Of a stretch of DNA of 64,000 nucleotides, positions 2,188 through 64,000 are shown piece after piece; the first letter of the stretch is position 1, and the number at the start of each line of letters is the position of its first letter. Source of the DNA: Octopus bimaculoides (Eukaryota); contig NC_068990.1 in the NCBI RefSeq assembly GCF_001194135.2, positions 93,472,172 to 93,536,171 on the forward strand, read 5' to 3'. The notes beneath the pieces are model-generated. The model was not told the DNA's origin. It worked only from the letters and a program-made list of their open reading frames with translations, and made no database searches. A program made the position numbers and the translations under genes.

Positions 2188-3109
2188 GAACTTCTGATGA
2201 AACCTTGCACTTAAATTTTATAGAGAGTGATTTTGGTGAGAGCTTTTCTGATAATGTCAACCTCCACATGGCTCCTGTGACTACAAAGGAGAGCAAAGGG
2301 TTAGAAGTATTTCCAATTCTCAAACCTTTCCTTGATTAAGACCAAGGCATGGATCATAATATCTAAATGCTCAACCCCGTTCTGCAACACCTTGGCCAAG
2401 TGTCTTCTATTATAACAACAAAAGCAATCCTTTCTACTCTAGGCACAAGGCCTGAAATTTGTGGGGAGGAGGATGAGTCAATTACATTGACCCCTGTGCA
2501 CAACTGGTACTTATTTCATTGACCCCAGAGGGACGAAAGGCAAAATCAACCTCAGCAGAATTTGAACTCAGAACATAGCAACAGAGGAAATGTTACTAAG
2601 CAGTTTGTGCAGCATCCCAATGAATCTGCCAGCTTAATATAATGATGATGGTGATGATGAAATCATAAATATTTATGAGGTGAAAATCTCAACAAATAAT
2701 AAAAATAATTAGATAATTAATTATGACAAATAATGATTAAATTTCTGTTTCCCACATCCAGCACCATTGTTGTAGCAGAACAAAAGAAAATTTCAATTTC
2801 AACACCTACAGATATTACCTTTTAATCATAGTGTATTGTTAAATTGAAGTAATCTTTTCTACTCTAGGCACAAGGCCCGAAACTTTTGGGGAGGGGGTCA
2901 GTCAATTAGATCCACCCCAGTATGCAACTGGTACTTAATTTATCAACTCTGAAAGTATGAAAGGTAAAGTCGACCTCAGTGGAGGTTGAACTTAGAATGT
3001 AAAGACAGACGAAATGCCACTAAACATTTCGCCTGGTATGCTAACGTTTCTGCCAGCTTGGCACCTTTGAATTGAAGCAATTCTTCCAGAAATTAGTATT
3101 CACACCTGG

Positions 3110-3140
<31 letters not shown>

Positions 3141-3333
3141 AATGCAAAAGTAAAACTGCTACATACATAAGGTTTTCATTTAGCAGTGCAGGACCATATA
3201 TATATATATATAATATTTGATTGGAGGATATGTTAACCGCATGAAGGGATAGCTGCATCCATGGAAATACTGGTTCAATACCTAGTATTTTGGGGGAATG
3301 AATTTCCTCAAAATAATAGGTATATATAAAGCA

Positions 3334-3544
3334 TATAGTTTATATCCATTTAAAAGAAGAGAACAAAATGGAGATTAGGAAGTTAATAATTGTTTATTAT
3401 TAACAAATTGGTCACCTTCGCTTCTTATAGCTATTTTAATTAATAGGGCCGTAAAAAGCGAAGATGAGCAATTTGTTGTTAATAATAAACGATTATCAAC
3501 TTCCTAATCTCCATTTTGTTCTCTTCTTTTAAATGGTTATAAAC

Positions 3545-3548
<4 letters not shown>
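3334..3548. mobile_element. Palindromic MITE or foldback element, ~90-bp near-perfect arms, TA-flanked
   Basis: ccatttaaaagaagagaacaaaatggagattaggaagtt mirrors aacttcctaatctccattttgttctcttcttttaaatgg across a ~35-nt loop. Confidence 0.8.
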
Positions 3549-3630
<82 letters not shown>

Positions 3631-3632
<2 letters not shown>

Positions 3633-3810
3633 AGAATATACGAAAAAACAGCAACAGACGAGGACAGGTGGTGTAAATAACAAAAGGATGTATTAGCATG
3701 ATGCTCAGGAATACGGAAAATCTTTGACGTTTCGAGCTACGCTCTTCAACAGAAAGAATACGGAGACAAGGAGAAAAACATGGAGAGAAAAAAATTGAAT
3801 AGTGTTCAGC
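3631..3810 (-). mobile_element. Dispersed repeat copy 1 with minimal hammerhead-like motif (3721-3757), Penelope/retrozyme-like
   Basis: Minus strand TCTTT-CTGTTGA-A-GAGC-GTA-GCTC-GAAAC-GTC-AAAGA; similar to copies at about 22.9 and 33.7 kb; abuts (TA)n. Confidence 0.6.
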
Positions 3811-3821
3811 CAACGGTCAAT

Positions 3822-3861
<40 letters not shown>

Positions 3862-4792
3862 AGGAGGGGGGAAGGGTGGAGAGATCGAGGGGAGAAAGAC
3901 AGATACATGCACGTGACACAAACATGGTAAAGATGCATGTGAAATACATGTGAGATAGTTAGAGCATGCACCTGTCCAACATAAAATATATCAAATGTCA
4001 CATGTAAAGAAGTTTTCACCCTTATAAGGGTGATACCACCCTTTAGATTTCTCTAACCTACCCAAGTATTGTCAACATGCAACTTAGAATCTCCAGGCCA
4101 AGAACATTAATCACTTTGATCTCTGCAATCTGAGAGGACTTACAGTTGCCATAGGCACAGCTCATTTCTCCCCCCAAAAGTAGAAGCAAATATCCAAAAC
4201 AGCTGTCAAGATAAGACTATTACATCATTCCATTTGTTTATTTGAATTCCATGTAAATGCATTCATTAAGCCTACTTGCATTTATCTGCCCTTTTTTACC
4301 TCCAGACCTACTCAACAAAGACTGTTGTTATGGCTGACTTTCAACATTGGAGCCACCTGTCTTGAATGAAGGAGCTGGAATTTTAAGTTCTCATTTATCT
4401 GAGCATTACTTTGTGAATGTCTATACCATGCCTACTTTAGCATTCTCCAATTCTCTCTCTCGAGGGTTCATTATATGTATCTTACACACACATATACATA
4501 CATGCATATGTATGTATACATACATATATACACGCACATGTATGTATACATGTATCTGAATCTATACGTATTACACCAACAAACAAAATCAGAGCTAAAA
4601 CCTTAAGGTAAGCTATTCATCCTCGACACACCTGAGACCTTTAAGCAAATATTTATGTAAGGACAGGACCCAGTTGATCCTTGGTAACTGTCCCACCCAG
4701 AAATAATAAAACTCCAAGAGAGGAATTGATCCTATAATCATTAAGTTAGCAGTCCAACATCTTGTTTACTCAGACATTCCATTATATAGTAG

Positions 4793-5227
4793 AGATGAGA
4801 GAGAAAGAGGTGGGGGGGNNNNNNNNNNNNNNNNNNNNNNNNNNNNNNNNNNNNNNNNNNNNNNNNNNNNNNNNNNNNNNNNNNNNNNNNNNNNNNNNNN
4901 NNNNNNNNNNNNNNNNNNNNNNNNNNNNNNNNNNNNNNNNNNNNNNNNNNNNNNNNNNNNNNNNNNNNNNNNNNNNNNNNNNNNNNNNNNNNNNNNNNNN
5001 NNNNNNNNNNNNNNNNNNNNNNNNNNNNNNNNNNNNNNNNNNNNNNNNNNNNNNNNNNNNNNNNNNNNNNNNNNNNNNNNNNNNNNNNNNNNNNNNNNNN
5101 NNNNNNNNNNTCTGATGAGGGAAAAAGAGGTGGGGGGTTGTCTGCTGAGAGAAAGTGGGGGGGTTGTGTGATGAGAGAGAAAGAGGTGGAGGTTTGTGTG
5201 ATGAGAGAGAAAGAGGTGGGGGTTTGA
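4793..5227. repeat. ~30-bp purine/G-rich minisatellite (tgtgtgatgagagagaaagaggtgggggtt) spanning an N gap
   Basis: The same unit appears on both sides of the gap at 4819-5110. Confidence 0.8.
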
Positions 5228-5637
5228 CAGTGTTATAGAATATTGTAGTGGACTTCTTCCAACTACATTTATTTACATCCTTAAGCTGCTCTTTGGTAGG
5301 TCATAGTATAAAACTTAGTGGTACTATATCATGGTAGCAACCAATATCTGTTTTCACTGAATACTTCCATGACAATTTCATTGTGCCAATGTCTCATTGC
5401 CTGGCACAGAGCCAACTTCCTCAATACTAGACTCCTTCCTGTTGAGGGGTTGTCTTGCAAATTACTTGGTCAACTCACTGGTGCTGGTACAATGTACACT
5501 GCCGTAAAGCGGTTGGCATTAGGAAGGGCATCTAGTCATAGAAACCATGCCAAAGTAAACATTGGGGCTTGGCATCTAATCGTACCAAAGAAGAAATTGG
5601 AACCAGCTCTTCTAACCCATGTCAGTATGGAAAACAG

Positions 5638-5672
<35 letters not shown>

Positions 5673-8600
5673 TAACAGTTTCTTCACTATTTTCACAGCA
5701 GATACTGTTCTAAATGGAATACACATCAATATTTTCGTGTCTGTCCATGTAGGCATATCATCACTATTAAAATGGAACCTTAAGATAGGTGTTGCTCTCT
5801 AACAGAATGCAGATTTCATCAAGTGGTACCAACTGTTATTGGCTCAAGCATGAATACATTCTCTGAGACTTACTAAACATGCCTTCAGATGTGTCTTAAA
5901 TGGAGACCCTAGATCCTTCTTCTTTCCTAATATAATCAGCCACCCCTCTTCATATATAGTCTTCTTGTAACGATTTCTCTTTAATCATTTTTCATTACTT
6001 CCATCACATCCCTTGTAAAATCTTAACATGATGTTGATGTAGCATCCTGTATTCTGATACCTTGGAGTCAACAACAGACTCAGCCATTGTTTTCTTTTCC
6101 TTATTTTACATTGTAATTGTCATCATCACTATCATTGTTTTAGCATCATTTTTCTATGCTTGTTTGGCTCAGACAGAATTCATTTCGGTAGATTTTCTAT
6201 GGCTGGACATGTTTTCATGGAAGACTGGATAAAAAGAACACCACTTGTATGATGACTATGTTCATTTTACAAGTTTTGTGCAATGTCAAAGCAAGGAGAC
6301 GCAAATACAACCAGGCACACACACAAAATCATTGTCTTAACATTCAATTTTCCATGCATGCATGAGTCAGACAGAATTTGTTGAGGCAGATTTTCTATGG
6401 CCGGATGCACTTCCTGTAGCCAATCATCAGCTGTATCCAAGCAAGGTATTTCCCTAAAGCTGAAGGTGTCTTCATGGAAGGCTGGAAATGAATCATACCA
6501 CTTGTACGGCAGTAACACTCATTTATAACGCTCATGCAATGTCTGGACCAAGAGACAGTAAAACACATACACACACATATATATACACATACACAATGGG
6601 TTTCTTTCAGTTTCTGTTTACCAAACCCACTCACAAGGCTTTGGTCAGCCTGAGGCTATAGTAGAAGATACTTGCTCAAGGTGCCATTAACTAGGACTGA
6701 ACTCCAGATCAAGTGGTTGGGAGGTAAACTTCTTAACTCCTATCATGAATTTTTTTCTTGATTTTCAGAAATTTCGTACCGGATGCTAACAACTTCAGAC
6801 CAAGCCAAAAAAATCGCAAATAAATCTACTTCGTGTGTCTAGAACAGTCGGCTTGTTCGAGAGTCCTGACTTTAGCCAAATTACTTTGGTTTTTCAAATG
6901 GCTCTTCAAATAGTTTACAAACATGTGACTTGCTTTAAAAAAGATATTTATCGACCAAGTAATTAAATAACTTCATAACCATATTTCCCATTATTGGAGT
7001 GATTTTTCGTTTTTCATTGACAAATATAACATTGTGTATGAAATTGACATCAACCAACCGTAACATTTACAACGTTTCTACTTTTGTTCTTGACCAAAGT
7101 TGGATAGGATTCCTATACGATTACCTTCACTGCTCCCACTGGTCGTTGGACATAGAATGAGACTCTGATATTGAATAGTTTCTCGTCTTATCATTTGTAC
7201 TTTAATAAAGTCTAAAGTGTTTTAATTATTATTACAAATAAACAAGCTGTTGATAACGGACCCCTTAGTATAACTACAATCATGGAAAGAAAAAAACCCC
7301 ACTTCTCTCTGTTCCAGTCGTTATTGTCAATCGATAGTTTAACCAACAATTTATCGATGTTCAACGTTTATTTATTCCATCAATTTGGCGGAAAATTGTA
7401 ATAATTTAAGAAGACAGATTAATGAGCCGTGCTAGGTTACCATATTCATCAGGTATATGGAACGTGTACATTTATTGATAAATATCTGTATGATCCAGAA
7501 AAAGCAAGTGTTACAATCAAGGTTTTCGCAAAAACATATACATATGTGAGTGCATGTGTGTGTGCGTGTGCGTCTGTGTATAATATACCAGTGTTTATAA
7601 ATACATACATACATATGTATATATATTCATTGTGAGGGGGAGATTTAAGAAGAAACTTCTAAATAATGCACGAAGAATGAAAGAGCTCTTAACTCGGATA
7701 TCGCATTAAAAAGACAATTTCTCTCCGTATATATATTTATATATAAAAGAAAAAACATACATTAAGCGAAAAAAGATTTTAAAATCAAAATCGTAGAAAG
7801 AAAATGGTTGGCGCTACGTTGTAGAATTGAATTCCATCAGTGAAATAGTGTATGTGTGTGTGTATATATATATATACATACATACATTATATATATATAT
7901 ATAATGTATGTATATATATATATGTTTGTATGAATATGTAAAGTAGTTGTGTGGATATATCTATCTGTATGTGTGTTTATTTGATAGATGACAATTTATT
8001 CTGCTCTTTCAAATTGTTATGAAAGCAATTATAATGAAGAGCAACAAAAAGCAAAAACACCTCTCTATGCCCCAACATCACACACACACACATATATATA
8101 AGGTAGATAGATAGATACACTGTGGTGTGATTCTGAGTGGCTATATGTAAATGTGTTTACATAAGTGTGTGCGTGTGTGTCTATATATATGTGTGTGTGT
8201 GTGTGATGTTGTGACTGTAGGATGTCGGTGATGAATGAGTTGCCATCGGAGTCCAACAGTAAACACCGAGCGCAGTATGTTTCTCAATGAATGTAGGATG
8301 AATATCGACAACATAAACAAATGTGCGATGAGGTGAGGCAGTTTAAAGTTGTGTTTTGGGGGGGAATAAAACAACAGACGTCTGCTATTATTATGAAATG
8401 GAAGGGACAGATTGGACGTCATGGAGCTTCACCTGCCACAATAAACAGACACACCACCGGACATTGGTGCAGAATACATGGAATCGTAAACTATGACGTG
8501 ACAAAGAATTAGGATAGAAAACTGAAAAACTGTTCCACTTTACCATATTTTCTTGGTGGATGCTATAGAAAGTCCTATCATTAGCATCAGAACACAGCCA

Positions 8601-53633: not shown

Positions 53634-55613
53634 TATATATACATACACATATGTAAAAATATATTTACCACTCCTAGCATTTTGACTTCATATCTGACCC
53701 CATTAAGTGTTTCCTGGCTTGAAAATCTTTATTAATGATTCTAAAATACCAAGATCACGGAGACAACTAGAAGCTTATCTCTTAATATATGGTGAACTTT
53801 TAGGGTAAAAGAAAAAAAAAACAACATTGATTTTGTGAATGAAACAAATTTATAAACTAAAAAAGTATTTGGTTGGAAAGCACAAAAACTATTGTAATAA
53901 TAACAGAAATAACTTCATGGAAACTCATGAAGGCCATCAGAACTCTGTTAATACTTGTTTATAAGACTTATCACTTAAACACTAGAGAACTGTGCCTCCC
54001 AATGGTACTTCTTTATGGATAGCTGTACCTCCCAGGGGTAACTATCTACGTTTTTGGTACCTACTTACAAGTAAGAGTCATGTGTCTCTCGAAAGACTCA
54101 GTACAGTACCTGTAAGCTAATTCTTTAATAATTTACCAGTGAGAATACCTGTAAAAATACCTGTAAGCATGCTTAGAACAAACCTGACAGCTAATTCTTT
54201 AATAACGCCTAAACCATTTGAGCTAAAGTTTTCCATTTTTTTTCTTTTTACTTCATGGAAGTTTCCAGAACCAGTTGATATCGTTGCAAAAAATCTAAAT
54301 CAAATTTTTAAAGATAAGAATCCTGCTACTTATGCTAATGAGATTTTCTGGGTTTTTTTCTTCTCTCTAAAGCAACCCAGATCTGGCGGAAGAAGATTGC
54401 CAAAATTGTCCGAAACTACAAAAGCATCACTTTTGCTGTTGCCAATGAAGATGACCATTCTAATTTAATGAAAGATTTTGGATTTGAAGATTCTGGTGAA
54501 GATATGAACATTGGAATAATGACAGAAGAAAAACGTTATGCCATGGAACCAATGGATGAATTTGACTCGTCTCATATTGAATCGTTTTTAGACGACTTTG
54601 TTAGCGGTTAGTGTCTGCACTTTTTTTTGTTAAAGTTCAAAACTTTAATCAATTTCAAGTTGGCATAAGTTGTACATGTTGAAATATCTAACATGTCGTA
54701 TAGACAAAGAATAATGCTGAGCAATGTTGGCTATATTTTACACATGTCCAGTTTATTTCATTCAATTCTTGGTGGTTTTGCCAGCAAGCATCTGGAAATA
54801 TAACCTTTTTCTTAAATTTGATATCTTAAGTTTATTCTGTGAATTAATAGGCTAGAAAGGGCATCCAGCTGTAGAAATATTGCCAGATTGGATTGGAGCC
54901 TAGTGCAGCCTTCTGGCTCGCCAGCCCTCAGTCAAACCGTCCAACCCATACCAGCATGGAAAGCAGATGTTAAGCAACGACAATGATGATGATGATATAC
55001 ATGGAACAATGGTTTCATGACTCACATGGAACTTTTGATAGTTTTATTTCAGCAGAGTACTCTTCTTCTCTATAAAAATCAACTGCATTTCCTTATGTTT
55101 GTCTCTTACTATTTGTATATATTTCTAAACACAACCGAAAGTATAGCATGCATCAGTTTTGATTTCCATTGTAATTATAAATTTGTTTATATTCCTGCAG
55201 GTAATCTAAAACCACACATCAAATCGCAGCCAATTCCCAAGAAAGACAAAGGTCCAGTTGTCACAGTTGTGGCCAACAACTTTAATTCTGTGGTTCTTGA
55301 CAAGTCGAAAGATGTCCTTATTGAATTTTATGCCCCATGGTGTGGTCATTGTCAGAAATTGGAACCTATATACAAAAAACTTGCCAAATCACTGCAGAAA
55401 AATAAAAATCTTGTTATTGCCAAGATGGATGCAACAGCTAATGATGTGCCTTCTAATTTCAAAACAGAAGGTTTTCCAACTATTTATTTTGTTCCCACCA
55501 ATAATAAGGAAAACCCTGTAAAATTTACTGGCGGCAGAGAGTTGAAAGATTTTGTTAAATTCCTTGAAGAACATAGCACCGTCTCACTAAACACTAAACA
55601 TATTGAATTGTAA
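41591..55613 (+). CDS. PDIA4: Protein disulfide-isomerase A4 (ERp72), 11 coding exons, 1878-nt CDS, 625 aa
   Basis: Spliced translation gives a signal peptide, three thioredoxin domains with [10 protein letters not shown] in a-a-b-b'-a' order, the PDIA4-type segment [16 protein letters not shown], and C-terminal HIEL. All 10 introns are GT..AG with matching phases. Confidence 0.96.
43244..43253. promoter_or_regulatory. Perfect CRE/ATF palindrome ATGACGTCAT in PDIA4 intron 1
   Basis: Sequence match only. Confidence 0.3.
44035..44430 (-). mobile_element. Decayed RTE LINE fragment (post-RT region) in PDIA4 intron 1
   Basis: Minus strand resembles [21 protein letters not shown], with many stops and frameshifts. 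Confidence 0.6.
45279..45384 (+). CDS. PDIA4: PDIA4 exon 2 ([36 protein letters not shown])
   Basis: Pyrimidine tract + tag| acceptor, TG|gtaag donor, thioredoxin N-terminal motif. Confidence 0.95.
45966..46088 (+). CDS. PDIA4: PDIA4 exon 3 ([11 protein letters not shown]...[12 protein letters not shown])
   Basis: ttcag| acceptor, first CGHC, AG|gtattt donor. Confidence 0.95.
47600..47682 (+). CDS. PDIA4: PDIA4 exon 4 ([28 protein letters not shown])
   Basis: tgtcag| acceptor, GYPT cis-Pro loop, G|gtatgt donor. Confidence 0.95.
48679..48817 (+). CDS. PDIA4: PDIA4 exon 5 ([24 protein letters not shown]...EFYAPW)
   Basis: aacag| acceptor, WKPPPEAV linker typical of PDIA4, TG|gtataa donor. 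Confidence 0.95.
49847..50052 (+). CDS. PDIA4: PDIA4 exon 6 ([15 protein letters not shown]...GPREDYG)
   Basis: Second CGHC, ttttag| acceptor, G|gtaaaa donor. Confidence 0.96.
51178..51333 (+). CDS. PDIA4: PDIA4 exon 7 (b domain start, [11 protein letters not shown]...SSYLDA)
   Basis: tgcag| acceptor, G|gtgaga donor, phases fit. Confidence 0.93.
52003..52151 (+). CDS. PDIA4: PDIA4 exon 8 ([12 protein letters not shown]...EPKKHVLDK)
   Basis: tttcag| acceptor, AAG|gtatgt donor. Confidence 0.93.
52893..53268 (+). mobile_element. tRNA-headed SINE group B, full length, with internal (TG/TA)n tract, in PDIA4 intron 8
   Basis: gtggtaagtagcttgc..ggttcagtccc..ggcaccttgggcaagtgtcttct..gatttggtagacggaaactgaaagaagcc..cagtcaaatgactgaaacaag. 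Confidence 0.85.
53372..53528 (+). CDS. PDIA4: PDIA4 exon 9 ([23 protein letters not shown]...DWSFDYRK)
   Basis: ttccag| acceptor, G|gtgaga donor, PLVGH and DxSFDYR motifs. Confidence 0.94.
54373..54606 (+). CDS. PDIA4: PDIA4 exon 10 ([11 protein letters not shown]...FLDDFVS)
   Basis: Only the AAG acceptor at 54370-54372 keeps the frame; G|gttagt donor; includes FAVANEDD and FGFEDSGED segments. Confidence 0.92.
55201..55613 (+). CDS. PDIA4: PDIA4 exon 11 ([14 protein letters not shown]...WCGHC...NTKHIEL*)
   Basis: ctgcag| acceptor, third [24 protein letters not shown] at 55611-55613. Confidence 0.97.
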
Positions 55614-58114: not shown

Positions 58115-58749
58115 TTTAGTGTCCAATGAAGTAAAGATATGAATAAGTGAGCTGGCTACACTTCTGGTAGAGGTCACAGATTATGCTCCCTCTTGCCTTG
58201 CCGGGTCTTCTCACGTACTGCATATTTCCAAAGGTCCCAGTCACTAGTCATTGCCTCCAGTTGTCCTCTAAGTTATATGTCCCCAACTCTTCCACGCTTT
58301 CTTCAGAAGCTTCCATTAGCAAATCTCTAAATTTTTGTCTGTTTGCTGGGTCTTTGAGCTTCCATAGTCTTCTTTTCCAGATTGGTTTATTTCTCCGGGT
58401 CTTTCTGGCTCTAATTCTGAAGTCACTGACTAGTAACCTATCTTAGTTTGTACACTCTTCACCTGGGAAAGACTTTGTATTTTTAAGCATCCATCTATCT
58501 CGTTTCCTGGTGAGGAGGCAGTCAATCTGTCTGATGTGCTCACCAGACTGATAAGTGATTAAGTGGCTGGCTGGTATTTTGAAGTTAGTGTTGCAGATCA
58601 TGAGATCATTTGCATCACAGAACTCCAGCAGCCTTATTCCCTCCTCATTTTTAGGTCCAAAACCATAGCTCCCATGCACTCCCTAGAATCCAGGGGGGTG
58701 CTGTCCAACATGTCCATTGAAGTCACCAGCCACAATAATAAAGTCTCTG

Positions 58750-58784: not shown

Positions 58785-59150
58785 TATATATNNNNNNNNN
58801 NNNNNNNNNNNNNNNNNNNNNNNNNNNNNNNNNNNNNNNNNNNNNNNNNNNNNNNNNNNNNNNNNNNNNNNNNNNNNNNNNNNNNNNNNNNNNNNNNNNN
58901 NNNNNNNNNNNNNNNNNNNNNNNNNNNNNNNNNNNNNNNNNNNNNNNNNNNNNNNNNNNNNNNNNNNNNNNNNNNNNNNNNNNNNNNNNNNNNNNNNNNN
59001 NNNNNNNNNNNNNNNNNNNNNNNNNNNNNNNNNNNNNNNNNNNNNNNNNNNNNNNNNNNNNNNNNNNNNNNNNNNNNNNNNNNNNNNNNNNNNNNNNNNN
59101 NNNNNNNNNNNNNNNNNNNNNNNNNNNNNNNNNNNNNNNNNNNNNNNNNA

Positions 59151-59360: not shown

Positions 59361-59794
59361 TACAGGGAGAATAGTTGGTGGAGGTTCGTTTTTCATATAC
59401 TTACATACATTTAAACACACACACACATGCTCTCATATGCTCACACATACACATTGACACACTACTTTATACAGACTCTAATAAATGGCTGTTAATGTCA
59501 ACTGAGAATTGGTGTACTGTCAAAATTAGTTTTTCAGAGAATCATCAAAATTGTTATAACTACTTGTGTATATTAATCAAAAATTGGACAAGGTCTACTT
59601 CATCTCGTTAAAAGGACATCATCCACTGATGTAATTAAGGTTAATAACATAAAACATAAATAAAATAAAATGAATGAAAACAAAAAACAACAAAGAAAAG
59701 ATGTTTAAAATTCAGTCATGTATCACAGTTTAAAACGTAAATTTATCTTCAAAAACAGACATTGCACGTCACAAAGTAAAATCAAACACCATGT

Positions 59795-60275
<481 letters not shown>

Positions 60276-61220
60276 CATAGCATAGGAAAGAGGGTTGATT
60301 AACTTAAAAACCCCCTAAAACTTTGATTCTTTTGTTTTTTACAACTTGGTTTCTGAGCTGTGAATATTCAATGTGAATTCCATTGATTTTAGTTTAATAA
60401 TGAACTCAGAAAAGAGGATTTATGTAACTTCTTTTACAAAGTCTTTGTACTTCGAATGAATTGTTGCTCCCAGCTTCAGTTGTTAGTCAGACTTATTCTG
60501 ACATGCGATTCTGATTATTGCAAATATTATCAAACATGATCAATATGTCACTTATCCTAAAATACGTCTGAGTGTGTGTGCGAGAGAGAGAGAGATAGAA
60601 AGAGGGATAGAGAGAGAGTGGAAGAGAGAAGAAGAAGAAAGAGATAAAGAGAGTGAGAGAGAGAGAAAGAGAGAAGAAAGAGAGAGAGGGTGTGTGTGTG
60701 TGCTTGAACATGAAAGAGTGAGAGATAGAGAATGACAATAGGAATTAGCATGTGTGTGTGTGTGTCAGAGAGAGAGAGAGAGAGTGTGAGAAAGAGAGGG
60801 AGAGTGTGTGTATGAGTGAGGGAGAGAGGGAAAGACAGACAGAGAGACAGACAGGGCAAATAAGTGTGTGTGTGTGTTTCTCTTTTAAATGTCTATTGAT
60901 TAAGTTAATTATCATCTCCGTATATTAAGTAATATCAACTGACCACTTTATCACATAAATGATATCTATATCGTGAAGTATATTTGCCACCTAAATGTGA
61001 CTAACCCTTAAGGGTTGATGCTACTGTAGCTTGTAGCCCCAGGAAGACACCTCCTCCAGCTGGCTATTGATACATTATCTGTGTCCTGTCAGTTTTTGCT
61101 CAGAGATTTATTATTGATATCATTTATGTGATTGTGATAGATCAGCATTTCTCTCCTCCTCCTCCTCTTGAGATCTCTAACTATTCCTACTGTGGTAGGA
61201 GGATAGCAATGAATGCATTG

Positions 61221-61254
<34 letters not shown>

Positions 61255-61344: not shown

Positions 61345-61501
61345 ATGCTCAACTTAATGAATGCTCAATTTAATGAATGCTCATCTTAATGAATGCTCAA
61401 CTTAATGAATGCTCATCTTAATGAATGCTCATCTAAATGAATGCTCAACTTAATGAATGCTTAAGTTAATGAATGCTCAAGTTAACGAATGTTCATCTTA
61501 A
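61345..61501. repeat. 16-bp minisatellite ATGCTCA(A/T)CTTAATGA, about 9.8 copies
   Basis: Units counted directly at a 16-nt period. Confidence 0.95.
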
Positions 61502-61727
61502 TTTTCCTCTGGTAATATTTACTGCTTATTTCTTTGCATTTTTTGACTATTTTTTTCTTTTAATATTTAGAGATGGACAATGGCCAAGTATTTTATGATA
61601 AATAAATGTTTTATCACTTAAGAATTTAGTCCTATTAAAAAGATGTTACTTTAGCTTAGATATAAATAGAGAAGAGTGAGGAGACGGGAACAGACTATAA
61701 AATCATGGCCATACAATACTTTAGGAC

Positions 61728-63998
61728 TCATCTTCGTGGAATGTTTTCAATATCTTGGTAATCATACATGTCACTAGGAACCAAATCCTGAATATTGTTG
61801 CCTTTGTCACTATCAGATGATTGTTTTCTCAAAATGGTGGGTTGAAAGTGCACAGTTAACTTTACATGAGAATGGTATTTTGTGATTGGTTGGGTATTTA
61901 GAAATGAATTTTTCCAACCTTTCTTTTTCCATTTTCTATGCTTTGTCTGTGGCTTAGATTTTGCGTAAGGGTAAATGTCAATATAAACATCGTTGCTCAC
62001 AGACTTTTCAAGATTGTTATTAGAATTGATTGCATGGAACGGTTTGGATTTCTGCCTGTCCTCTCTCTCAGGCTTTGAATCCTTTACTTCATCAACAAAG
62101 GCAGAACGTGAAATCTTTTGGTTATTACCTGGTCTATAATCTTCTGGATTAATACCAGAGGCAGAGTTAGAGTCAAGATCATCACCAGAAGCAGAGTTAG
62201 AATCAAAGTCATCCTCATCATCATCAGAAGAAGAGCTGGGGTTGAGATTATCCCCAGAGGCAGAACTATAATCTGTATCATCAACAAGCGTTAAACTAGA
62301 TGCTGAACTACTAGGTGGGGATTTTCTAGGGTCAGGTTTCCTGTATGGATTATGAATTACGGAATAACTCGATCCTGATTTATTCCTATGAGCAGGAATA
62401 GAGTTATTGAGTACAGATATTGATGCTGAAGTAGTTGTAGGAGAAATTAATGTGGAATTTTGGTTACTTTCAGGAGATTTAATAGAATTATCTGAAACCG
62501 AATTGGAACCTGGTTTTTCACCTTTCAGGGAAGAGATACCTGCATATCCACCTGATGGAGAAGGAGTATCTGGGTAATATCCAGAACCATAGTTGGAGTG
62601 TAGATTTTCTCCAGATGCAGAACTGGAATCCATATCCTCACCAGAGGCAGAATTAGAATCCATATCCATACCAGAGGCTGAATTTGTGTCCATATCATCT
62701 CCAGATGCAGATCTCAAGTCAGTATAAGCTTTGGATCTTGAAGAAGATGATGCAATATTTTGGGTGACTGAAGCAGAATAATCATCAATGTTAAGTGTAG
62801 TGTTTGTGTTTAAAGAACCTTCTGGAGTGAAAGTAATATGTGGTGAGACTCCAGAAGTTCGGTGATTTAGAACAGAACTATGCAGGAGAGAACTACTTAA
62901 AGCTGAAGTAAGACGTGGTGCTGCTAAAGTGGTAGAAGAAGAATCTAGAAATGTTTTTGGAGAAAAACTAAAAAGTTTGTAACTACTTTGTATTGGTGTG
63001 GAGTATGAACTTGTAACAGGGGTGTGAGTTGAACTAGGGAATATTTTAGGGGGTACTGTTGATGTGATGTCACTGTTTATGACAGATGGAGGATGTGGGG
63101 TTGTAACAGAAAGGAATTTATACATTGTAGAAGATTTTATAGGGTGAGAAGTAGAACTTGAAGATATTTTGGCTTCATGAAGATTTTCATAACTTAATGA
63201 TCTAACATGTGATTCTGTGGATCTTTCTAAGGAAGTGGTAACTTTAGTGAGAAATTTTGATCTTAAATTAGGTTCAGTATCAGAACTAGATTTCAGCTCT
63301 TCCTTAGAACCAGAACTAGACTTCAAGTCATCTTCAGAATCAGTACTAGATTCCAGGTCATCCCCTGAATCAGAGCTAGATTCCTGGTCCTCCTCAGTGT
63401 CAGAGCTTGATTCTAGATCATTCCCAGAGGAAGAACTATGGTCTAAATCTTTTTCAGAAATTGTGGATGTGACTTCCCTGTTTATAACAGATGCAGGATG
63501 TGGAGTTGTAACAGAAAGGAACTTATATGTTGTGGGAGATTTTGTTGATTGAAAAGTTGAGCTTGAAGGTATTTGGGTTTCACGAAGATTTCCATAACTG
63601 GAACTAGAACCAGACTTAAGCCATGAAATGTAACTAGAATGAAGATGAATCGTTGATGATCTAACATGGGATTCTGTGGCTCTTTCTGAGGAAGTGGTAA
63701 CTTTAGTAGGAAATTTTGATCTTAAATTAGGTTCAGTGTCAGAACTTGGTTTCAGCTCTTCTCTGGAACCAGAACCAGACTTGAAGTCATCCTCAGACTC
63801 AGTACTTGATTCCAGGTCATCCTCTGAATCAGTGCTAGATTCCAGGTCATCTCTTGAATCAGAGCTAGATTCCTGGTCCTCTTCAGAGCCAGAGCTTGAT
63901 TCTAGATCATTCCCAGAGGAAGAACTAGGGTCGAAATCTTTTTCAGAAATTCTGGATGTGACTTCCCTGTTTATAACAGATGTAGGATGTGGAGTTGT
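61728..63998 (-). CDS. Partial large terminal exon of a Ser/Asp/Thr-rich repetitive protein (mucin, proteoglycan or phosphoprotein-like), at least 756 aa, 5' part outside the window
   Basis: I translated 63327-63998 by hand and found no stop, so the frame is open to the window edge. The 2.27-kb stretch has no microsatellites or SINEs. Repeat offsets are multiples of 3 (489, 459, 405 nt). TGA at 61728-61730. Confidence 0.85.
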   Translation of the reverse strand, partial: TTPHPTSVINREVTSRISEKDFDPSSSSGNDLESSSGSEEDQESSSDSRDDLESSTDSEDDLESSTESEDDFKSGSGSREELKPSSDTEPNLRSKFPTKVTTSSERATESHVRSSTIHLHSSYISWLKSGSSSSYGNLRETQIPSSSTFQSTKSPTTYKFLSVTTPHPASVINREVTSTISEKDLDHSSSSGNDLESSSDTEEDQESSSDSGDDLESSTDSEDDLKSSSGSKEELKSSSDTEPNLRSKFLTKVTTSLERSTESHVRSLSYENLHEAKISSSSTSHPIKSSTMYKFLSVTTPHPPSVINSDITSTVPPKIFPSSTHTPVTSSYSTPIQSSYKLFSFSPKTFLDSSSTTLAAPRLTSALSSSLLHSSVLNHRTSGVSPHITFTPEGSLNTNTTLNIDDYSASVTQNIASSSSRSKAYTDLRSASGDDMDTNSASGMDMDSNSASGEDMDSSSASGENLHSNYGSGYYPDTPSPSGGYAGISSLKGEKPGSNSVSDNSIKSPESNQNSTLISPTTTSASISVLNNSIPAHRNKSGSSYSVIHNPYRKPDPRKSPPSSSASSLTLVDDTDYSSASGDNLNPSSSSDDDEDDFDSNSASGDDLDSNSASGINPEDYRPGNNQKISRSAFVDEVKDSKPEREDRQKSKPFHAINSNNNLEKSVSNDVYIDIYPYAKSKPQTKHRKWKKKGWKNSFLNTQPITKYHSHVKLTVHFQPTILRKQSSDSDKGNNIQDLVPSDMYDYQDIENIPRR

Positions 63999-64000
63999 AA

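What the first reader, a model, noticed from the sequence alone, without database searches (positions are those of the whole stretch)
61728..63998. Hidden extension of a giant single-exon Ser/Asp-rich protein with alternating acidic and Thr/basic blocks
Seen: the ORF track starts at a TTG (63326), but the frame stays open for another 224 codons to the window edge. There are three copies of a 135-163-aa module anchored on TTPHPxSVIN. The two upstream modules contain acidic decapeptides (e.g. DDLESSTDSE, EDQESSSDSG) followed by PNLRSKFxTKVTTSxERxTESHVRS. Many S-x-E motifs are present. Established: S-x-E is the Fam20C consensus, and Ser/Asp-rich phosphoproteins act in biomineralisation and matrix assembly. 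Inference: a lineage-specific secreted matrix protein (cartilage, statolith, egg case, skin or sucker). No family is recognisable to me.
Basis: partly seen in the sequence, partly recalled or inferred. Interest (0 to 1): 0.7.

Follow-up and report, generated by a model that had tools for sequence, protein, structure and literature searches.

The report
Octopus giant acidic serine-rich repeat exon
The region is the last 2.3 kb of a real protein-coding exon of at least 10.6 kb in Octopus bimaculoides; it encodes a disordered, very acidic, serine-rich repeat protein with no detectable relatives, is already listed in UniProt as an uncharacterised protein, and is interesting mainly as a candidate sugar-chain-bearing matrix or mucus protein.

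Summary
The reading frame is real. It is open for 757 codons on the minus strand (63998..61728). The window edge abuts an assembly gap. With 10 kb more of the same chromosome (Octopus bimaculoides CM046610.1), the frame continues through two N gaps to a splice-acceptor-like site about 8.3 kb beyond the edge. The exon is at least 10.6 kb, with 2,018 sequenced codons and no internal stop.

It is not a single-exon gene. The exon has no start codon with a signal peptide. It opens at an acceptor that a gene model for the upstream HHIP-like gene also uses, in another frame.

S-x-E is not enriched (11 seen, 10.5 expected). Ser-Gly is enriched 2.7-fold, mostly next to acidic residues, which fits the glycosaminoglycan-attachment rule.

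No Pfam or PDB relative was found. The only sequence hits were the gene's own models, including in a full HMMER scan of 1.84 billion proteins. AlphaFold gives no fold.

UniProt A0A0L8HVX8 ("Uncharacterized protein", 1159 aa) already contains nearly all of the "hidden extension".

Best reading: the terminal exon of a probably secreted, heavily Ser-modified polyanionic protein. Secretion and modification are inferred. This is an ordinary orphan low-complexity gene of modest interest.

The parts
61728..63998 (-). In-window part (756 codons plus TGA stop at 61730..61728) of a terminal coding exon of at least 10.6 kb. The exon continues beyond 64000 through an assembly gap.
   Evidence: Open frame. 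Continuation in L001. 0 stops against 17-63 in other frames for the unique part.
63969..63998 (-). Module anchor TTPHPTSVIN (copy 1 in the window). It follows the 1244-N assembly gap that starts at 64001.
63732..63920 (-). Acidic tract of module 1: SSGNDLESSSGSEEDQESSSDSRDDLESSTDSEDDLESSTESEDDFKSGSGSREELKPSSDTE. 10-aa / 30-nt periodicity.
   Evidence: TRF period 30 at 63786-63917
63657..63731 (-). Mildly basic Ser/Thr block PNLRSKFPTKVTTSSERATESHVRS of module 1
63480..63509 (-). Module anchor TTPHPASVIN (copy 2), 163 aa after copy 1
63273..63431 (-). Acidic tract of module 2. It is 30 nt shorter than in module 1. The TTG at 63326 that the ORF track used as a start lies inside it.
   Evidence: TRF period 30 at 63274-63428; in-frame indels of 30 and 54 nt against module 1
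63198..63272 (-). Basic Ser/Thr block PNLRSKFLTKVTTSLERSTESHVRS of module 2
63075..63104 (-). Anchor TTPHPPSVIN (copy 3). It begins the second module type (SDITSTVPPKI...) and leads into the unique 458-aa C-terminal region.
62580..62711 (-). Array of four decapeptides of the type SASG[DE]DMDxN plus GSG. These are Ser-Gly dipeptides in acidic context (candidate xylosylation / GAG sites).
   Evidence: TRF period 30 at 62611-62711; SASG 7 observed against 0.0 expected
62154..62273 (-). Second acidic Ser-Gly array: DYSSASGDNLNPSSSSDDDEDDFDSNSASGDDLDSNSASG
   Evidence: TRF period 30 at 62154-62213
61911..61961 (-). Only strongly basic patch, KSKPQTKHRKWKKKGWK (+10 net charge in a 30-residue window). 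It could be a polyanion-binding site or a nuclear-localisation-like site.
61731..61772 (-). C-terminal tail DMYDYQDIENIPRR, with Tyr flanked by acidic residues (resembles tyrosine-sulfation contexts; this is inference), followed by the TGA stop
61559..61564 (-). First polyadenylation-signal-like hexamer (ATTAAA) 164 nt after the stop, in AT-rich sequence. Others lie at 61374 and 61112 (AATAAA).
   Evidence: Pattern match only, not evidence of use.

Best explanation
Window 61728-63998 (minus strand) is the 3' end of one very large terminal coding exon of an Octopus bimaculoides gene on chromosome CM046610.1. The exon runs about 10.6 kb from acceptor to stop, including 4.5 kb of assembly gaps.

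Layout of the encoded polypeptide:
- a short Cys-containing N-terminal piece;
- an acidic Ser-Gly decapeptide array;
- a tandem series of 135-222-aa modules. Each has an anchor (YKFLSVTTPHPxSVIN), an acidic [DE]D[LM][DE]S[SN][ST]xS[EG] decapeptide tract, and a mildly basic Ser/Thr block;
- a unique 458-aa tail with two more acidic Ser-Gly arrays, one basic patch and an acidic Tyr-rich end.

Proposed mechanism:
- The exon is spliced to upstream exon(s) that supply the start codon and probably a signal peptide.
- The product is an intrinsically disordered, secreted polyanion.
- Its many serines are modified in the secretory pathway. The acidic Ser-Gly sites would be xylosylated and extended into glycosaminoglycan chains. 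The Ser/Thr/Pro blocks would carry O-glycans, with some phosphate.
- The result is a hydrated, cation-binding proteoglycan- or mucin-like component of an extracellular matrix or secretion.

Shown: the coding frame, the exon extent, the repeat architecture, the motif statistics, and the absence of folded domains and homologues.

Inferred: splicing partner, secretion, the modifications, and the matrix role.

My confidence that it is a genuine coding exon is about 0.9. The 0.4 below is for the secreted, Ser-modified polyanion mechanism as a whole. The specific glycosaminoglycan reading is about 0.25.
For: Coding:
- There are no internal stops in 705 + 556 + 756 sequenced codons. Every other frame has 22-109 stops.
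- The unique N-terminal 348 and C-terminal 458 codons have 0 stops, against 22-27 expected from shuffles.
- Clear indels between modules are 30, 54 and 60 nt.
- Ser is encoded by 5-6 different codons from both codon families (AGY 11-25 %), and composition has strong 3-base periodicity. The Ser-richness is therefore at the protein level.

Exon start:
- The sequence ttttcttctcttcacag|G lies at L001 816/817, with stops in all frames upstream.
- No ATG exon with a compatible donor exists in the 547 nt before it.

Secretory hints:
- The only Cys residues (7, 42, 50) and the NKT and NIS sequons sit at the exon start.
- The upstream same-strand gene model has Folate_rec + GSDH domains (HHIP-like) and uses the same acceptor.
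- N-x-S/T sequons are depleted: 11 observed against 34.5 expected.

GAG-like sites:
- SG occurs 52 times against 19.4 expected (z 8.6). SG[DE] and SGx[DE] are also enriched.
- 41 of 52 SG sites have at least 2 acidic residues within 8 positions.
- This matches the published rule of Ser followed by Gly with flanking acidic residues within about 8 residues (PMC2063922) and the decorin site EDEASG (PMC10424144).
- Those authors also found that all CS sites lie in disordered or low-complexity regions (PMC10424144).

Disorder:
- AlphaFold2 single-sequence models gave mean pLDDT 57.5 and 46.7, pTM 0.13, and almost no secondary structure.
- No hydrophobic segment is present (maximum KD19 0.73).
Against: - No signal peptide, start codon or upstream exon was seen, so secretion rests on indirect hints.
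- The HHIP-like model that shares the acceptor reads it in a different frame and stops at L001 851. A simple fusion is therefore not what that gene model predicts.
- No transcript or proteomic evidence was available. The UniProt accession was absent from the supplements of three octopus mucus and ink proteome papers.
- dN/dS between repeat copies is 0.58-0.95 on few differences, so there is no clear purifying selection on repeat sequence.
- Acidic Ser clusters are also typical CK2 substrates. [ST]xx[DE] occurs 130 times against 104 +/- 7 expected.
- The basic patch KHRKWKKKGWK could be a nuclear localisation signal.
- Motif shuffles ignore the repeat structure, so their z-scores overstate the number of independent observations.
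Confidence: 0.4

Rival explanations
1. One reading: a secreted, Fam20C-phosphorylated Ser/Asp-rich phosphoprotein that binds calcium and acts in biomineralisation or matrix assembly, in the way dentin phosphoprotein and other acidic matrix phosphoproteins do.
For: - Composition is 25 % Ser and 15 % Asp+Glu, with net charge about -133 over 2017 residues.
- Acidic decapeptide arrays such as DDLESSTESE contain some S-x-E.
- It shares the same indirect secretory hints as the best explanation.
Against: - S-x-E is not enriched: 11 against 10.5 expected in the window, and 29 against 36.6 over the whole exon.
- There is no similarity to any known matrix phosphoprotein in Pfam, PDB or the protein collections.
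- Octopus has little mineralised tissue, although it does have statoliths (my own knowledge).
- Secretion is unproven.
Confidence: 0.2
2. An intracellular, probably nuclear or nucleolar, acidic phosphoprotein of the Nopp140/treacle type. Alternating acidic Ser clusters would be phosphorylated by CK2 and separated by more basic blocks, with the C-terminal KHRKWKKKGWK acting as a nuclear localisation signal.
For: - Acidic and basic blocks alternate.
- The CK2-type pattern [ST]xx[DE] is moderately enriched: 130 against 104 +/- 7.
- A strongly basic patch lies near the C-terminus.
- The exon has no signal peptide or transmembrane segment.
Against: - The 'basic' blocks are only weakly basic (maximum +4 per 30 residues inside modules) and are Ser/Thr-rich rather than Lys/Ala/Pro-rich.
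- No Pfam match to SRP40/Nopp140 or treacle domains was found.
- The Cys residues and N-glycosylation sequons at the exon start, the depletion of sequons elsewhere, and the neighbouring secreted-type gene that shares the acceptor all point the other way.
Confidence: 0.15
3. Not a functional gene. A minisatellite-like tandem array happens to be open in one frame, or the locus is a decaying or never-expressed ORF, and automatic gene finders picked it up.
For: - No homologues exist anywhere.
- dN/dS between copies is near 1.
- The region is repeat-rich and gap-ridden.
- The gene models are fragmentary and inconsistent between annotations: 465 aa, 1082 aa and 1159 aa.
Against: - More than 800 non-repeated codons flanking the array are also open in the same frame, against 22-27 stops expected.
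- Indels between copies are in frame.
- Ser codon usage is mixed and 3-base periodicity is strong.
- The ORF starts exactly at a good acceptor and ends before AT-rich sequence with poly(A)-signal-like hexamers.
Confidence: 0.07

Closest known systems
Large secreted proteoglycan core proteins with acidic Ser-Gly attachment regions (aggrecan/versican CS regions, perlecan domain I 'SGD' sites, decorin EDEASG, C. elegans CPG proteins)
   Same: - Ser-Gly dipeptides recur with acidic neighbours (41 of 52 sites), often as A-S-G-[DE], as in the decorin site quoted in PMC10424144.
- They sit in long, disordered, low-complexity tandem-repeat regions encoded by one very large exon.
- Like the C. elegans CPGs (PMC2063922), the protein has no sequence relatives outside its own lineage.
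   Different: - There is no sequence homology to any of them, and none of their globular domains (link, C-type lectin, LDLa, Ig, chitin-binding) was found by Pfam.
- No signal peptide has been seen.
- GAG substitution is entirely untested.
- The mentions of aggrecan, versican and perlecan motifs rest on my own knowledge, not on a tool result.
Acidic Ser/Asp-rich matrix phosphoproteins (dentin sialophosphoprotein / phosphophoryn and other Fam20C substrates)
   Same: Extreme Ser plus Asp/Glu content, short acidic tandem repeats, predicted disorder, and one large repeat-bearing exon. DSP itself also carries GAG chains (title and abstract of PMC3039539).
   Different: - The repeat unit is a decapeptide with Leu/Met and Thr, not DSS triplets.
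- S-x-E is not enriched.
- There is no homology.
- The modules contain long non-acidic Ser/Thr/Pro/His stretches.
Mucins (PTS tandem-repeat domains in a giant central exon)
   Same: Giant exon, tandem modules with length variation in whole repeat units, Ser+Thr+Pro about 39 %, assembly gaps caused by the repeats, and rapid lineage-specific evolution.
   Different: - It is much more acidic than typical PTS domains.
- No VWD, C8, TIL, CK or SEA domains were found in the sequence available.
- Thr and Pro are modest (8.9 % and 5.2 %).
Nopp140 (NOLC1) / treacle
   Same: Alternation of acidic Ser clusters with more basic blocks, and many CK2-type sites.
   Different: - The basic blocks are weak and not Lys-rich.
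- No SRP40 C-terminal domain was found.
- The repeats lie in one exon. Treacle has one repeat per exon (my own knowledge).
- The extracellular-type hints at the exon start also differ.
HHIP-like proteins (Folate_rec + GSDH beta-propeller)
   Same: The immediately upstream gene model on the same strand has these domains, and its last coding exon uses the same acceptor as the giant frame.
   Different: - That model reads the acceptor in another frame and stops 35 nt later.
- No HHIP-family domain lies in the giant exon.
- The fusion is an open possibility, not a finding.

Membership tests
Proteoglycan core protein (GAG-bearing) | Ser-Gly (or Ser-Ala) acceptor serines with flanking acidic residues within about 8 positions (rule as stated in PMC2063922 and PMC10424144) | tested here: met
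   SG occurs 52 times against 19.4 expected. 41 of 52 sites have at least 2 Asp/Glu within 8 residues. SASG[DE]D decapeptide arrays lie at 62580-62711 and 62154-62273.
Proteoglycan core protein (GAG-bearing) | Entry into the secretory pathway (signal peptide) | tested here: inconclusive
   The exon starts at a splice acceptor and has no signal peptide or TM segment of its own. The 5' exons lie outside the 10 kb of extra DNA obtainable.
Proteoglycan core protein (GAG-bearing) | Covalently attached glycosaminoglycan chain demonstrated biochemically | not testable with these tools
   Needs chondroitinase/heparinase sensitivity tests or glycoproteomics.
Fam20C-substrate secretory phosphoproteins (SIBLING / phosphophoryn-like) | Abundance of the S-x-E/pS consensus beyond composition | tested here: not met
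   11 against 10.5 +/- 2.7 in the window part, and 29 against 36.6 +/- 5.1 over all sequenced parts.
Fam20C-substrate secretory phosphoproteins (SIBLING / phosphophoryn-like) | Sequence relationship to a known member | tested here: not met
   No Pfam family, no PDB chain, and no protein other than its own gene models.
Gel-forming or membrane mucins | Tandem-repeat Pro/Thr/Ser domain in a large exon | tested here: inconclusive
   Tandem modules in a giant exon are present, and Ser is 25 %. But Thr is 8.9 %, Pro is 5.2 % and Asp+Glu is 15 %, so the composition is atypical.
Gel-forming or membrane mucins | Flanking VWD/C8/TIL/CK or SEA domains | tested here: not met
   No Pfam hits in the 2,017 sequenced residues. 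Upstream exons were not seen.
Nopp140 / treacle nucleolar phosphoproteins | SRP40 C-terminal domain or LisH/treacle N-terminus, and Lys-rich basic repeats between the acidic Ser clusters | tested here: not met
   No Pfam match. Basic blocks reach at most +4 per 30 residues within modules. The N-terminus of the whole protein was not available.
HHIP-like family | Folate_rec-like Cys-rich domain and GSDH beta-propeller in the same polypeptide | tested here: inconclusive
   These domains are in the upstream gene model, which shares the acceptor at L001 817 but is read in another frame and stops at 851. Its earlier exons could not be fetched.

The most novel reading that the evidence does not exclude
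The giant exon may be the true (or an alternative) last exon of the upstream HHIP-like gene. Octopus would then make a Hedgehog-interacting-protein-like beta-propeller carrying a polyanionic, glycosaminoglycan-type stalk of roughly 3,500 residues. That would be a new architecture for the family and could tether or concentrate ligands in the matrix. The current model, which stops 35 nt into the exon, would then be an artefact of a mis-called penultimate exon, of an exon hidden in the 228-N gap, or of a 1-nt assembly error.
Probability: 0.2. Interest if true: 0.5.

Novelty: new member of a known kind. Interest (0 to 1): 0.25.

Why it matters
If the secreted, Ser-Gly-modified reading holds, this would be a candidate core protein for cephalopod glycosaminoglycans. 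From my own knowledge, squid and octopus cartilage and skin are rich in unusual, highly sulfated chondroitin, but their core proteins are poorly known.

It would also be an example of a large orphan gene built by expansion of a module inside a single exon.

Practically, the locus shows three fragmentary and inconsistent gene models (465, 1082 and 1159 aa) for what is most likely one exon of about 3,500 codons broken by two assembly gaps. This is a concrete annotation and assembly fix.

Otherwise it is an ordinary lineage-specific low-complexity gene.

Tried and rejected
1. Homology. Three word-index searches all returned only the window's own product: the whole 756 aa, the exon's non-repetitive N-terminal 216 aa, and a 539-aa query with the acidic repeats removed. 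In two of them only the 8000 most word-sharing candidates were scored. I therefore also ran full HMMER with the C-terminal 292 aa against 1.84 billion representatives, again with only the self hit. I could not confirm whether other cephalopod proteomes are in those collections.
2. Pfam at E up to 10 gave only sub-threshold noise: DUF1411 at 0.17 and a T26-6p Ig-like domain at 0.0015 with 19 bits against a cut-off of 27.
3. PDB sequence search found nothing for the window part. The exon's N-terminal 144 aa gave weak myosin essential light chain matches (E 0.009-0.1, 19 bits). I treat these as chance: identity is low, no EF-hand Pfam hit supports them, and the region contains Cys and sequons.
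4. dN/dS between repeat copies was too weak to decide anything (14-27 differences per pair, omega 0.58-0.95).
5. I looked for a private first exon (ATG, hydrophobic stretch, phase-compatible GT donor) in the 547 sequenced bases before the acceptor and found none.
6. Fetching more upstream DNA via the older 1159-aa model failed because it is not on record.
7. Literature. The accession A0A0L8HVX8 does not appear in the searchable full texts or in the supplements of three octopus mucus and ink proteome papers. Searches for 'Octopus bimaculoides + HHIP' and for cephalopod proteoglycan core proteins gave nothing relevant.
8. Antisense reading. Each module has a 100-130-aa ORF on the opposite strand (e.g. 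window 63217-63552 +). These are interrupted in every module and mirror the sense repeats, so I rejected them as coding.
9. tblastn of the protein against the rest of the window found no paralogous copy.
Full report
**Where the window comes from**

The one database protein identical to the region (P0001, 465 aa) is encoded on Octopus bimaculoides assembly GCA_001194135.2, chromosome CM046610.1 (94.6 Mb). Fetching it with 10-kb flanks gave locus L001 (record 93,523,899-93,545,296, reversed). L001 is the reverse complement of the window end. Window position w equals L001 position 73,126 - w, so 64000 corresponds to L001 9126 and 61728 to L001 11398.

**Checking the observation**

- The mechanical ORF list shows 61728..63326 (-), 532 aa, starting at TTG.
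- Translating 63998..61728 gives 756 codons and one terminal stop, so the frame does stay open for 224 more codons.
- The anchors TTPHPTSVIN, TTPHPASVIN and TTPHPPSVIN are at residues 1, 164 and 299. The spacings are 163 and 135 aa.
- Tandem Repeats Finder reports 30-nt periodic arrays at 63786-63917, 63274-63428, 62611-62711 and 62154-62213. These are the acidic decapeptides.
- The two blocks PNLRSKFxTKVTTSxERxTESHVRS lie at 63657-63731 and 63198-63272.
- 'Many S-x-E' does not pass a chance test. There are 11 in the window part against 10.5 +/- 2.7 in residue shuffles, and 29 against 36.6 +/- 5.1 over all sequenced parts.

**How far the frame really goes**

The window edge at 64000 directly abuts a run of 1,244 N (L001 7882-9125). 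Beyond it the same kind of sequence is open for 556 codons (L001 6214-7881). Then comes a 3,278-N gap (2934-6211), followed by another 705 open codons (L001 818-2933).

The frame opens at L001 817, immediately after ttttcttctcttcacag, a polypyrimidine tract plus CAG acceptor. All three frames carry stops upstream of it. From acceptor to stop is 10,582 nt, of which 4,522 are N. That gives 2,018 sequenced codons, or about 3,500 if the gaps are sized correctly.

Nine anchors are sequenced, and two module types alternate:
- a 135-163-aa type beginning REVTS...;
- a 194-222-aa type beginning SDITSTIPPKIPKPTPV....

The first 348 residues of the exon and the last 458 are not repeated.

**Is it coding?**

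- The three sequenced segments have 0 internal stops in one frame each. The other five frames have 22-109 stops.
- The non-repeated parts are the fair test, because a tandem array can inherit openness from one unit. They show 0 stops in 348 and 458 codons, against 14-63 in the other frames and means of 21.7 and 27.1 (minima 9 and 11) in 2,000 shuffles.
- Unambiguous indels between close module copies are 30, 54 and 60 nt.
- Serine is encoded by five to six codons from both codon families (AGY 11-25 %). Third positions are 44-49 % T and 7-10 % G. The Ser-richness is therefore a property of the protein, not of a simple nucleotide repeat.
- dN/dS between the three 163-aa copies is 0.58-0.95, but on only 14-27 differences. 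This says little. It is compatible with weak constraint on exact sequence, as is usual for disordered repeats.
- The 100-130-aa ORFs on the opposite strand recur once per module and are always interrupted. They are mirror images of the repeats.

I conclude that this is a genuine coding exon, with about 0.9 confidence.

**It is not 'hidden' in public annotation, and it is not single-exon**

The 90 % cluster of P0001 has a second member, UniRef100_A0A0L8HVX8: 'Uncharacterized protein', Octopus bimaculoides, 1159 aa. Its residues 425-1159 are identical to window translation residues 22-756, that is window 63935..61731. Its N-terminal 424 residues come from the segment beyond the gap. An older gene model therefore already reads almost the whole extension.

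The chromosome-level record carries two other fragments: a 1082-aa product over L001 1067-7772, and the 465-aa P0001. The three models are pieces of one exon, broken by the gaps.

The exon has no start of its own. The first in-frame Met (L001 1067, MPAVKLPSS...) is not followed by a hydrophobic stretch. No ATG exon with a phase-compatible GT donor exists in the 547 sequenced bases before the acceptor.

**Neighbours**

Upstream on the same strand is a gene model with Folate_rec and GSDH domains, which is the HHIP-like architecture. It has 556 residues and runs off the locus. It ends at L001 851. Reading the DNA, its last coding piece starts at the same acceptor (817) but in another frame and stops after 35 nt (GTG GCA ACC ... 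AAC TGA).

Downstream is a convergent thioredoxin/PDI-like gene. Its last exon is at window 55017-55613 (+) (Thioredoxin, E 5.5e-28). The giant exon is thus the 3' end of its gene. A TGA stop at 61730-61728 is followed by AT-rich sequence with ATTAAA at 61564 and 61374 and AATAAA at 61112.

**What the protein looks like**

- Composition of the 2,017 sequenced residues: Ser 25.0 %, Thr 8.9 %, Asp 7.9 %, Glu 7.2 %, Pro 5.2 %, Cys 0.1 %.
- Net charge is about -133. Acidic tracts reach -13 to -14 per 30 residues. Within modules the 'basic' blocks reach only +4. The single strongly basic patch is KSKPQTKHRKWKKKGWK near the C-terminus (+10 per 30).
- There is no hydrophobic segment. The maximum 19-residue Kyte-Doolittle mean is 0.73.
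- The only three Cys are at exon residues 7, 42 and 50, next to NKT and NIS sequons.
- AlphaFold2 without an alignment gave mean pLDDT 57.5 (C-terminal 141 aa) and 46.7 (the two window modules), with pTM 0.13 and almost no secondary structure. This agrees with disorder, with the caveat that single-sequence models are weak evidence.
- The decapeptides of the modules (DDLESSTDSE), of the exon's N-terminal array (GDNLDSGSTS) and of the C-terminal arrays (EDMDSNSASG) fit one unit, [DE]D[LM][DE]-S-[SN]-[ST]-x-S-[EG].

**Motif statistics**

- Ser-Gly is enriched: 19 against 7.0 in the window part, and 52 against 19.4 overall (z 8.6). SG[DE] and SGx[DE] are also enriched. SASG occurs 7 times against about 0 expected.
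- 41 of the 52 SG sites have at least two acidic residues within eight positions.
- N-x-S/T sequons are depleted: 11 against 34.5.
- CK2-type [ST]xx[DE] is mildly enriched: 130 against 104 +/- 7.
- Because the sequence is repetitive, these shuffles overstate the number of independent observations. The direction of the effects is clear, but the z-scores are not probabilities.

**Relatives**

None were found.
- Pfam: nothing at the default threshold and only sub-threshold noise at E up to 10.
- PDB sequences: nothing for the window part, and weak myosin light-chain matches, probably chance, for the exon's N-terminal piece.
- Protein collections: only the gene's own products in three word-index searches and in a full HMMER scan of 1.84 billion representatives with the C-terminal 292 aa.
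- There is no second copy in the window.

Either the gene is restricted to a narrow lineage, or it evolves too fast to be recognised, or the repeat-rich orthologues are not annotated in other cephalopods. I could not check other cephalopod genomes directly.

**Most likely mechanism**

The anatomy is that of a large, disordered, polyanionic, serine-modified extracellular protein:
- a giant repeat exon spliced behind exons that must supply the start;
- Cys and sequons only at the junction end;
- acidic Ser-Gly arrays;
- Ser/Thr/Pro-rich spacer blocks;
- Tyr in acidic context at the very end (DMYDYQDIE).

The Ser-Gly sites fit the published rule for xylosyltransferase acceptor sites, which is Ser followed by Gly with acidic residues within about eight positions (PMC2063922). 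[quoted passage not shown]

I therefore favour a proteoglycan- or mucin-like secreted polyanion over a Fam20C-type phosphoprotein. The two are not exclusive, and both depend on secretion, which I could not show.

The main non-secreted rival is a CK2-phosphorylated nuclear acidic protein of the Nopp140/treacle kind. It is favoured by the basic patch and the CK2-type sites. It is disfavoured by the weak basic blocks, the absence of the family's domains and the extracellular-type hints.

**Comparison with the known, and verdict**

- It works most like proteoglycan core or mucin repeat regions and acidic matrix phosphoproteins.
- It is a member of none of them by sequence or domain content.

What this analysis adds:
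- The exon is about five times longer than the window part.
- It starts at a splice acceptor shared with the HHIP-like gene model.
- S-x-E is at chance level, whereas acidic Ser-Gly is enriched.
- No relative is detectable.

The most novel reading still open is a fusion with the HHIP-like beta-propeller (probability about 0.2).

Overall this is a new member of a known kind, of modest interest (0.25).

Noticed in passing
L001 1-851 (beyond the window; equivalent to window coordinates about 72,275-73,125): An HHIP-like gene model (Folate_rec + GSDH, 556 aa) lies upstream on the same strand. Its last 35 coding bases start at the very acceptor (L001 817) that opens the giant frame, but in another frame, and stop at 851. 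This suggests a mis-modelled junction, a missing exon in the 228-N gap at L001 42-269, or alternative splicing.
   Followed up: partly
window 64000 / L001 7882-9125 and L001 2934-6211: The window edge coincides with an assembly gap of 1,244 N. A second gap of 3,278 N lies further into the same exon. Both probably hide collapsed repeat modules, and they explain why three different partial gene models exist for one exon.
   Followed up: yes
window 63217-63552 (+) and one per module in L001 (e.g. 1819-2184, 2533-2892, 6216-6581, 7371-7676, all -): There are recurrent antisense ORFs of 100-130 aa (MALSEEVVTLVGNFDLKLGSVSELDFSSS...), one per module and each interrupted. They look like mirror-frame by-products of the sense repeats.
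   Followed up: partly
window 61345-61502: A 16-nt tandem repeat (ATGCTCAACTTAATGA, 9.9 copies, 88 % matches) lies about 230-385 nt downstream of the stop, inside the presumptive 3' UTR or downstream region. A (TG)16 run lies at 61222-61253.
   Followed up: no
window 55017-55613 (+): This is the last exon of a convergent thioredoxin/PDI-like gene (Pfam Thioredoxin, E 5.5e-28). It belongs to the multi-thioredoxin-domain gene model at L001 17513-21398.
   Followed up: partly
window 58443-58679 (-): A 78-aa ORF (…GIRLLEFCDANDLMICNTNF…ITYQSGEHIRQIDCLL…) reminds me of the endonuclease part of a LINE-type retroelement. Pfam gave no hit at E <= 0.01, so this is only an impression from memory.
   Followed up: partly
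window 59700-60300 and 60582-60851: There are long imperfect (TA/TG/CA)n and (GA)n microsatellite tracts, plus an N gap at 58792-59149, between the giant exon's 3' end and the PDI-like gene. They produce spurious long ORFs (YIYIYI..., SLSLSL...).
   Followed up: no
whole sequenced exon (L001 818-11395): N-x-S/T sequons are three-fold depleted (11 against 34.5 expected from composition), despite 34 % Ser+Thr and 5 % Asn. This would make sense if the protein passes through the ER and N-glycosylation is selected against. The repeat structure makes the statistic soft.
   Followed up: partly
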